The position numbers were made by a program, and so were the translations under genes. A stretch of DNA of 63,877 nucleotides, filler included, from Octopus bimaculoides (Eukaryota): NCBI RefSeq assembly GCF_001194135.2. It is 6 parts of 4 records of this genome, joined end to end, with 100 filler letters (N's around TTAATTAATTAA, not from the genome) between each part and the next. Parts side by side here need not be neighbours in the genome. Positions count along the whole stretch, not along the records: positions 50,646 to 62,760 come from NC_068985.1; 5 more parts are not named here. The stretch is one strand, 5' to 3'. This document shows, one piece after another, positions 61,241-61,490 of this stretch (its first letter is position 1; the number at the start of each line of letters is the position of its first letter). Below the pieces are notes generated by a model. The model was not told the origin of the DNA, made no database searches, and saw nothing but the letters and a program-made list of their open reading frames with translations.

Positions 61241-61490
61241 GGGATAATGTACGAAAAAACAACAACAGACGAGGACAGGTGGTGTAAATAACAAGAGGAT
61301 GTATTAGTATGACGCTCGGGAATACGGAAAGTCTTTGACGTTTCGAGCTACGCTNNNNNNNNNNATGACGCTCGGGAATACGGAAAGTCTTTGACGTTTC
61401 GAGCTACGCTCTTCAACAGAAAGAATACGGAGACAAGGAGAAGAACACGGAGAAAAAAAATTGAATAGTGTTCAGTCAACGGTCAATCAT
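61241..61490 (-). mobile_element. Family D repeat, copy 3 (with an internal 10-N gap and overlap duplication)
   Basis: Homologous to 5264-5463 and 51480-51682; abuts (TA)n. Confidence 0.88.
61388..61424 (-). ncRNA. Minimal type I hammerhead-like ribozyme (CUGUUGA core variant, canonical GUC triplet)
   Basis: Minus strand: UCUUU-CUGUUGA-A-GAGC(GUA)GCUC-GAA-ACGU-C-AAAGA. All three helices are formable; stem III is the palindrome ACGU, as in dimer-forming minimal hammerheads. Confidence 0.65.

What the first reader, a model, noticed from the sequence alone, without database searches (positions are those of the whole stretch)
61241..61490. Dispersed ~200-bp non-coding repeat (family D) encoding a minimal hammerhead ribozyme: candidate octopus retrozyme/non-autonomous Penelope derivative
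Seen: three homologous copies (5264-5463, 51480-51682, 61241-61490), all in the same orientation. The minus strand of 61388-61424 reads UCUUU CUGUUGA A GAGC-GUA-GCUC GAA ACGU C AAAGA. This gives stem I (UCUUU/AAAGA), a core box, stem II hairpin, GAAA box, palindromic ACGU stem III and a GUC triplet, with predicted cleavage between 61393 and 61392. Established: minimal type I hammerheads with a palindromic stem III occur in Penelope-like element pseudo-LTRs and retrozymes and typically cleave as dimers. Inference: this is a self-cleaving, non-autonomous retro-RNA family mobilised by Penelope machinery. I cannot tell whether it has already been described.
Basis: partly seen in the sequence, partly recalled or inferred. 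Interest (0 to 1): 0.85.

Follow-up and report, generated by a model that had tools for sequence, protein, structure and literature searches.

The report
Degenerate Penelope-type mini-hammerhead in octopus repeat
A short repeated element in octopus DNA carries what looks like the minimal hammerhead ribozyme of Penelope-like retrotransposons, but one essential core base is changed, so it is most likely an ordinary, probably inactive transposon relic and not a proven self-cleaving RNA.

Summary
Two ~200-bp homologous copies lie in my piece (51472-51675 and 61241-61490, same orientation, 80% identical). The third copy is outside it and unverifiable. The 10-N gap is flanked by an exact 46-nt duplicate, most likely an unmerged contig overlap, and the motif lies wholly to its right.

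The motif has every hallmark of Penelope-like element (PLE) minimal hammerheads except one. Present: a 5-bp helix I, a bulged base between A9 and G10.1, the G10.1-C11.1 pair, GAAA, a palindromic C15.2-G16.2, and GUC. The exception is that the U-turn box reads CUGUUGA, not CUGANGA (A6 to U). Both copies share this change.

A descriptor allowing that single mismatch matched once in 202 Mb of simulated sequence. Metagenome contigs hold real PLE hammerheads with the same bulge and helix II but a canonical core. Both octopus copies abut (TA)n, a known PLE target.

Against a working ribozyme: Rfam finds nothing, the second copy has four disruptive changes and none compensatory, the units are not in tandem, and no PLE ORF lies nearby.

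Verdict: a probable PLE-derived non-autonomous repeat with a degenerate mini-hammerhead. "Retrozyme" and self-cleavage are unsupported. Interest is low to moderate.

The parts
61241..61354 (-). Family D copy B, left contig part. In hammerhead sense this is the 3' two-thirds of the element. It ends at the gap inside the duplicated 46-mer.
   Evidence: Aligns with copy A end to end.
61355..61364 (.). Assembly gap of 10 N.
   Evidence: Flanked by an exact 46-nt duplicate, 61309-61354 = 61365-61410. Copy A has this segment once. Most likely an unmerged contig overlap.
61365..61490 (-). Family D copy B, right contig part. The first 46 nt repeat the left contig end. The homology with copy A ends at CGGTCAATCAT (61480-61490).
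61388..61424 (-). Mini-hammerhead-like motif. Helix I 5' strand 61424-61420 (UCUUU). Box 61419-61413 (CUGUUGA, with U at position 6 = 61416). Bulged A 61412. Helix II 61411-61408 / 61404-61401 (GAGC/GCUC). Loop 2 61407-61405 (GUA). G12 A13 A14 61400-61398. A15.1-C-G-U16.1 61397-61394. C17 61393. Helix I 3' strand 61392-61388 (AAAGA).
   Evidence: Read directly. Only hit of the min-HHR descriptor in the piece. The hammerhead-type fold scores -5.6 kcal/mol. The MFE of -8.0 instead pairs UGUU with AACG, with z = -0.71.
61229..61240 (.). (TA)6 tract abutting the 3' end of copy B (hammerhead sense).
51472..51675 (-). Family D copy A, 204 nt.
51573..51610 (-). Decayed counterpart of the motif: CCUUU CUGUUGA A GAGC GUAG GCUA GAAA CC U A AAACA. 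It has the same U6 box. The G10.1-C11.1 pair, the ACGU palindrome, C17 and two helix I pairs are lost.
   Evidence: Folds poorly (-3.9 kcal/mol, z = +0.53).
51449..51471 (.). (TA)n tract abutting the 3' end of copy A (hammerhead sense).
61376..61384 (+). First copy of the exact 9-nt direct repeat GAATACGGA. The second copy is at 61423-61431. Together they bracket the 37-nt motif. The repeat is degenerate in copy A.
   Evidence: Read directly. Unexplained.

Best explanation
Family D is a short (about 195-205 bp), dispersed, non-coding retroelement-type repeat of an octopus genome. Its minus strand carries a relic or variant of the minimal type I hammerhead (min-HHR) found near the 3' end (pseudo-LTR) of Penelope-like elements (PLEs).

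Shown:
- There are two diverged copies with common ends.
- The motif matches the min-HHR architecture at every defining position but one.
- The substitution A6 to U is present in both copies. By inference it was already in their common source.
- (TA)n sits at the same end of both copies.

Inferred:
- The element derives from, or was copied by the machinery of, a PLE. Its minus-sense RNA would be reverse-transcribed at a nick in a (TA)n microsatellite, which puts its 3' end next to (TA)n.
- In canonical PLEs two such motifs pair through the ACGU palindrome to build helix III, and cleavage follows C17. Here that would be between 61393 and 61392, leaving a 2',3'-cyclic phosphate and a 5'-OH.
- With U6 breaking the CUGA U-turn and no tertiary loop contacts, this copy is predicted to cleave very poorly or not at all. 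Copy A is dead.

It is therefore a transposon relic. It is neither a demonstrated ribozyme nor a retrozyme in the strict sense.
For: - The motif string is exact.
- It meets the hallmarks that Cervera & de la Pena list as arguing against randomness: a nucleotide between 9 and 10.1, G10.1-C11.1, palindromic 15.2-16.2 and a 4-5 bp helix I (PMC4209133).
- Chance expectation for the descriptor with at most 1 core mismatch is about 3e-4 per 62.8-kb window. The null is not biased by genomic hairpins.
- A metagenome scan for CUGWUGA-A-GAGC-N3-5-GCUC-GAAAC returned 11 loci. Nine are eukaryote-like contigs in three families, all with the canonical A6 and followed by (G/A)U(C/U).
- One of them, L005, has an RVT_1 ORF and a CX2CxxC plus GIY-YIG region (Pfam E = 3e-4) on the same strand. 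Its hammerhead lies about 700 nt after the stop codon and about 85-100 nt from the 3' end. The octopus motif is therefore one substitution away from bona fide PLE hammerheads.
- Both D copies abut (TA)n at the same end. Only 4.6% of positions in the piece lie within 15 nt of such a tract.
- PLE clades insert in (TA)n (PMC8557442).
- Penelope elements are abundant in octopus, with 31 recently active families and a burst at JC distance 0.2 (PMC13282606, PMC8967140). I judge the 80% identity between the two copies to be of the same order.
Against: - The invariant A6 is U in both copies. In a comprehensive mutagenesis of a type III hammerhead, U-turn mutants have low activity (PMC9901934).
- No Rfam hammerhead model matches, even at E<=10 on 136 nt.
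- Helix II is 4 bp, against the 6-8 bp typical of PLE min-HHRs.
- Only two copies could be examined. The differences in copy A are all disruptive, so there is no covariation support.
- No PLE RT/EN ORF lies in the 12-kb piece.
- Both copies share the same 5' end, unlike random 5' truncation of a PLE.
- (TA)n is seen on one side only.
- 24 kb of Octopus vulgaris DNA contained no D copy.
- The predicted MFE mispairs the core.
- The number of windows the scan examined is unknown, so the chance estimate is not corrected for multiple looks.
Confidence: 0.55

Rival explanations
1. Chance resemblance. Family D is an ordinary SINE, MITE or LINE-tail repeat (for example mobilised by the microsatellite-targeting Dong-R4 LINEs that are active in octopus). 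It happens to contain an imperfect 37-nt hairpin whose internal loop resembles hammerhead boxes.
For: - The core box fails the CUGANGA rule, and no Rfam hit appears.
- The MFE of the segment is a plain imperfect hairpin with unremarkable stability, z = -0.71.
- Copy A does not keep the motif.
- No PLE ORF lies nearby.
- SINEs make up 11.6% of the O. vulgaris genome and Dong-R4 is recently active (PMC13282606).
- About 13 chance matches are expected per 2.7-Gb genome, and the number of windows scanned is unknown.
Against: - Expectation is about 3e-4 per window.
- The features matched (bulge, G10.1-C11.1, palindromic 15.2-16.2) were defined independently in 2014.
- Real PLE hammerheads differ from this motif by one base in the fixed positions.
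- No tRNA-like part was found.
- No similarity was found to the LINE fragment in the piece.
Confidence: 0.25
2. One reading: an active self-cleaving retrozyme. Minus-strand multimeric transcripts would be cut after GUC by dimeric hammerheads, circularised, and reverse-transcribed by PLE proteins.
For: - The min-HHR architecture is intact in copy B apart from position 6.
- A natural position-6 variant (A6C) stays active, preferring Mn2+ (PMC7151607).
- The gap inside copy B could hide a tandem junction.
- The 46-nt contig overlap suggests near-identical copies elsewhere in the genome (inference).
Against: - U6 lies in the U-turn.
- Even canonical PLE min-HHRs cleave very weakly in vitro.
- The units are solitary, with no tandem array.
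- There is no canonical type I loop-loop design, which retrozymes have.
- Copy A is degenerate.
Confidence: 0.07
3. Assembly artefact. The apparent element or motif at 61241-61490 is created by mis-joining contigs at the gap.
For: A 10-N gap with a 46-nt duplicated flank sits inside the element.
Against: The motif lies wholly within one contig (61365 onward). Copy A, 9.8 kb away and gap-free, is collinear with the collapsed copy B.
Confidence: 0.03

Closest known systems
Minimal hammerhead ribozymes (min-HHR) of Penelope-like elements (Cervera & de la Pena 2014, PMC4209133). Concrete example: the Neptune-like PLE on metagenome contig MDSP01002983.1 (locus L005).
   Same: - Type I topology with no helix III hairpin.
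- A15.1-C-G-U16.1 palindrome, allowing dimer pairing.
- Bulged A after A9, G10.1-C11.1 pair, GAAAC, and H17.
- Short helix I.
- L005 and two other contig families read CUGAUGA-A-GAGC-loop-GCUC-GAAAC(G/A)U(C/U). This is the same bulge and the same 4-bp helix II.
- The motif lies on the order of 100-150 nt from the element's 3' end.
- (TA)n target preference is known for Neptune, Naiad and Hydra PLEs.
   Different: - Position 6 is U, not A, in both octopus copies.
- No RT-EN ORF or pseudo-LTR pair is attached.
- The unit is a discrete ~200-bp repeat.
- Helix II is shorter than the 6-8 bp typical of the published families.
- No sequence similarity exists outside the motif.
Metazoan non-LTR retrozymes (Cervera & de la Pena 2020, PMC7229834; Li et al. 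2026 preprint, 10.64898/2026.07.22.740005).
   Same: Small (170-400 nt), AT-rich, non-coding units carrying a type I hammerhead. They are proposed to be PLE-dependent. Solitary monomers exist alongside arrays.
   Different: Retrozymes are tandem repeats. Each unit has a canonical hammerhead with the CUGANGA / GAAAY / RUH core, and usually loop 1-loop 2 contacts. Family D is solitary here, is of the minimal type, and has a broken core box.
Natural core variants at position 6 (A6C hammerhead of phage Bcep176; PMC7151607).
   Same: A natural substitution of the conserved A6 in an otherwise complete hammerhead.
   Different: That variant is C6, in a tertiary-stabilised ribozyme, and was shown active (Mn2+ preferred). 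U6 in a minimal motif is untested.

Membership tests
PLE minimal hammerhead (min-HHR) | Catalytic box C3-U4-G5-A6-N7-G8-A9 | tested here: not met
   The box reads CUGUUGA in both copies, so A6 is U. The exact-core descriptor gives no hit in the piece.
PLE minimal hammerhead (min-HHR) | G12-A13-A14 followed by the A15.1...U16.1 pair and H17 | tested here: met
   GAA-ACGU-C at 61400-61393. In copy A: GAA-ACCU-A.
PLE minimal hammerhead (min-HHR) | Unpaired nucleotide between A9 and G10.1 | tested here: met
   A at 61412, and also in copy A. Hallmark taken from PMC4209133.
PLE minimal hammerhead (min-HHR) | G10.1-C11.1 pair closing helix II | tested here: met
   GAGC/GCUC in copy B. Broken in copy A, which reads GCUA.
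PLE minimal hammerhead (min-HHR) | Palindromic positions 15.2-16.2, giving a dimeric helix III | tested here: met
   ACGU in copy B. Cofolding of two 37-mers gives -22.7 kcal/mol. Lost in copy A, which reads ACCU.
PLE minimal hammerhead (min-HHR) | Helix I of 4-5 bp flanking the core | tested here: met
   UCUUU/AAAGA, 5 bp. Only 3 bp remain in copy A.
PLE minimal hammerhead (min-HHR) | Located in the terminal repeat or 3' region of an element encoding RT plus GIY-YIG EN | tested here: not met
   No such ORF lies in 50646-62760. The only RT-like ORF is a non-LTR-type fragment 7 kb away. The comparator L005 does have it.
PLE minimal hammerhead (min-HHR) | Family-wide covariation or compensatory changes in the helices | tested here: inconclusive
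   Only two copies are available. The four structural differences are all disruptive. More copies could not be fetched.
Non-LTR retrozyme | Head-to-tail tandem units, each with a complete type I hammerhead | tested here: not met
   No tandem array at either locus. The copies are 9.8 kb apart. A junction hidden in the 10-N gap cannot be excluded.
Non-LTR retrozyme | Conserved centre CUGANGA / GAAAY / RUH | tested here: not met
   GAAAC and GUC are present but the first box fails. Criterion quoted from the supplement of PMC7229834.
Non-LTR retrozyme | Expression as linear and circular RNA of unit length; self-cleavage | not testable with these tools
   No transcriptome or assay was available.
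Rfam hammerhead families (RF00163, RF00008, RF02275-7) | Covariance-model match | tested here: not met
   No hammerhead hit at E<=10 in the piece or in 61365-61500 alone. I expect these models to score helix-III-less min-HHRs poorly, so the negative result is weak. That expectation is inference and was not tested.

The most novel reading that the evidence does not exclude
Family D is a high-copy octopus non-autonomous Penelope derivative whose mini-hammerhead carries a natural U6 core and still cleaves as a dimer. It might prefer another metal ion, as the C6 variant does. It would produce unit-length or circular RNAs in octopus tissues. That would be a first functional position-6-U hammerhead and a first cephalopod retrozyme-like RNA.
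Probability: 0.07. Interest if true: 0.6.

Novelty: new member of a known kind. Interest (0 to 1): 0.3.

Why it matters
If the reading is right, it adds cephalopods to the animals whose repeats carry Penelope-type mini-hammerheads. I found no paper linking hammerheads or retrozymes to octopus repeats.

It also gives a natural case of a short derivative that kept spreading with a broken U-turn. That bears on the open question of whether these ribozymes are needed for PLE-type transposition or merely ride along (discussed in PMC8557442).

It does not change what is known about hammerheads. As it stands it is an annotation-level finding.

Tried and rejected
1. Rfam cmscan at E<=10 on the whole piece and on 136 nt around the motif found no hammerhead. 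The hits were only microsatellite-driven miRNA look-alikes.

2. More copies by exact 20-mer in JGI metagenomes: none.

3. More copies through protein space.
   - A 40-aa ORF across the motif had no candidates.
   - The LINE-like ORF had one distant hit on a 542-nt contig.

4. Octopus DNA through a rhodopsin query.
   - This gave one locus, 24.3 kb of O. vulgaris, which holds no D copy.
   - It did confirm the window is octopus-like: SINE-like repeats are shared at 82-93% identity.

5. Literal sequence search of the paper library: nothing.

6. ARAGORN found no tRNA-like part.

7. Pfam on the non-repetitive ORFs of the piece found nothing relevant.

8. A tRNA-SINE reading of the plus strand (B-box-like GTTTCGAGC) was considered by eye and dropped. 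There is no A box, no tRNA fold, and the putative head would sit mid-element.

9. I did not build a covariance model from the metagenome hammerheads. They were selected with a pattern taken from the octopus motif, so scoring that motif with them would be circular.

10. Supplements of PMC4209133 and PMC8557442 are not held as text.

Full report
**Observation.**

The piece 50646-62760 holds two homologous ~200-bp non-coding copies in the same orientation. Copy A is 51472-51675 and copy B is 61241-61490. They match at 148 of 184 aligned bases (80%), or 69% counting gap columns. Their best conserved block is the 20-mer CTACGCTCTTCAACAGAAAG (family D20). C17 falls at 61393.

**The gap.**

The 10 N at 61355-61364 are flanked by an exact 46-nt duplicate, 61309-61354 = 61365-61410. 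Copy A has this segment only once and is collinear with copy B once the duplicate is collapsed. The likeliest reading is two contig ends overlapping by 46 nt that the scaffolder did not merge. The position of the break hints at near-identical copies elsewhere in the genome, which is inference. A real tandem duplication hidden in the gap cannot be excluded. The motif itself lies entirely in the right-hand contig.

**What the motif is.**

In hammerhead numbering, copy B reads as follows:
- helix I, UCUUU/AAAGA (5 bp)
- box, CUGUUGA
- one unpaired A
- helix II, GAGC-GUA-GCUC, with the G10.1-C11.1 pair
- G12 A13 A14
- A15.1-C15.2-G16.2-U16.1
- C17

Cervera & de la Pena (PMC4209133) defined the minimal hammerhead of Penelope-like elements as having no helix III hairpin. 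[quoted passage not shown] They also noted a short helix I of 4-5 bp.

Copy B has all the single-sequence features. The one failure is the U-turn, where A6 is U. Copy A has the same CUGUUGA, so the change almost certainly predates both copies. Two independent A-to-T hits at one site would be expected at roughly 0.1% given about 10% divergence per copy (my estimate).

**Chance.**

I wrote a descriptor for this architecture: helix I of at least 4 bp, the box with at most 1 mismatch, 0-1 bulged nucleotide, G10.1-C11.1, helix II of at least 4 bp, GAAA, a palindromic dinucleotide, U, then H.
- Its only hit in the piece is this site.
- In 202 Mb of first-order Markov sequence with the piece's composition, scanned on both strands, it hit once. 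With an exact core it never hit.
- That is about 6e-5 per 12 kb, 3e-4 per 62.8 kb, and about 13 per 2.7-Gb genome.
- A looser descriptor gave 0.01 per 12 kb.
- Non-low-complexity hairpins of this geometry are not enriched in the 36 kb of real octopus DNA I hold (7 against 11.2 expected). The null is therefore fair.
- I do not know how many windows the scan read, so this is not corrected for multiple looks.

**Related sequences.**

Octopus DNA is almost absent from the searchable collections.
- An exact 20-mer scan of metagenomes, an ORF across the motif and the LINE-like ORF gave nothing useful.
- A rhodopsin query reached one 24.3-kb O. vulgaris locus (L001). It has no D copy. It shares SINE-like repeats with 59645-59953 at 82-93% identity, so the window is from an octopus or a close relative.

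A second metagenome scan used the motif with position 6 left as A or U (GTTTCGAGCN{3,5}GCTCTTCAWCAG). It returned 11 loci.
- Nine are ~40% GC contigs in three sequence families. All carry the canonical CUGAUGA, the same bulged A and the same GAGC/GCUC helix II. All are followed by (G/A)U(C/U), which the pattern did not require.
- One family is a bona fide PLE. On L005 the same strand carries an RVT_1 ORF, a CGNCQQC linker and a GIY-YIG region (Pfam E = 3e-4). The hammerhead lies about 700 nt after the stop codon and about 85-100 nt from the point where copies diverge.
- The two remaining loci, including the only U6 hit, are GC-rich contigs. On L006 (the U6 hit) the match lies inside a long ORF. 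I read both as chance matches.

The octopus motif is therefore one substitution away from demonstrable PLE hammerheads. There is no similarity outside the motif.

**Context.**

In hammerhead sense, both D copies end next to a (TA)n tract (51449-51471 and 61229-61240). Only 4.6% of positions in this microsatellite-rich piece lie within 15 nt of such a tract. The same-end coincidence in both copies is therefore unlikely to be chance.

(TA)n is the preferred target of Neptune, Naiad and Hydra PLEs (PMC8557442). Penelope elements are among the most abundant octopus repeats, with 31 recently active families and a burst at JC distance 0.2 (PMC13282606, PMC8967140). C17 lies 152 nt from the 3' end of D, the same order as in L005.

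**Against function.**
- Comprehensive mutagenesis of a hammerhead found low activity for every single mutant of the CUGA U-turn, apart from the C3-G8 pair swap (PMC9901934).
- A natural A6C variant does work, mainly with Mn2+ (PMC7151607). A6U is untested.
- Even canonical PLE min-HHRs cleave weakly, and only as dimers.
- The predicted MFE of the 37-mer (-8.0 kcal/mol, z = -0.71) pairs UGUU of the box with AACG. The hammerhead-type fold is worth -5.6 kcal/mol.
- Copy A has lost C11.1, G16.2, C17 and two helix I pairs, with no compensation.
- Rfam finds no hammerhead at E<=10. I expect these models to score helix-III-less motifs poorly, which is inference.
- There is no tandem organisation and no PLE ORF in the piece.
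- Both copies share the same 5' end, so D is a discrete unit. It is not a randomly 5'-truncated PLE.

**Conclusion.**

The most likely reading (about 0.55) is a PLE-derived or PLE-mobilised non-autonomous repeat carrying a degenerate mini-hammerhead that was already U6 when these copies were made.

The alternatives rank as follows:
- Chance resemblance in an unrelated SINE-like repeat, about 0.25. Such a repeat could, for instance, be moved by the microsatellite-targeting Dong-R4 LINEs active in octopus.
- An active retrozyme, about 0.07.
- An assembly artefact, about 0.03.

The finding is a new member of a known kind, of low to moderate interest. The decisive test is a genome-wide consensus of the family, which these tools could not reach.

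Noticed in passing
window 60936-61239: A foldback of about 300 bp. Its 111-nt arms (60936-61046 and 61129-61239) are 91% complementary with an 82-nt spacer. It is MITE-like, and its right end runs into the (TA)6 that abuts D copy B. A similar terminal string (ACATATAAGAGAGATG) recurs at 61503-61518, just right of copy B.
   Followed up: partly
window 54205-54708 (-): A 167-aa ORF that looks like the C-terminal part of a non-LTR retrotransposon RT (LEYC..LW motif). It has no Pfam hit. It has one distant homologue (62% identity over half its length) in 5.8 billion proteins.
   Followed up: partly
window 59512-59954 and 62320-62475; L001 7349-7501 and 22491-24259: SINE-like repeats are shared between the piece and Octopus vulgaris chromosome OX597836.1 at 82-93% identity. 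This supports an octopus origin for the window.
   Followed up: partly
window 50991-51088; L001 19574-19672 and 20234-20332: A ~100-bp repeat in the piece occurs as an inverted pair about 560 bp apart in the O. vulgaris locus (77% identity). It is probably the terminal repeats of a small DNA element.
   Followed up: no
window 61376-61384 and 61423-61431: An exact 9-nt direct repeat, GAATACGGA, brackets the 37-nt hammerhead-like segment at 47-nt spacing. A degenerate version sits at the same places in copy A. It may mark an old duplication or an inserted module. Unexplained.
   Followed up: no
window 61489-61506 and 61599-61616: A perfect 18-nt inverted repeat starts exactly at the right edge of D copy B and encloses 92 nt. 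It is absent at copy A.
   Followed up: no
L005 (MDSP01002983.1) 1377-3627 (-); also L004, L007, L012, L002, L003, L008, L010, L011: Metagenome contigs of eukaryotic composition carry three families of canonical mini-hammerheads, CUGAUGA-A-GAGC-loop-GCUC-GAAAC. L005 is a Neptune-like Penelope element with RVT_1, a CX2CxxC linker and GIY-YIG, and the hammerhead lies in its 3' region. The host organisms are unknown.
   Followed up: partly
window 50646-62760: All 150 listed Rfam matches at E<=10 (of 153) fall below the families' gathering scores. Most are miRNA families such as mir-297, mir-3149 and mir-1277, and they sit on (TA)n, (TG)n and (TATG)n microsatellites. They are composition artefacts, not genes.
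   Followed up: yes
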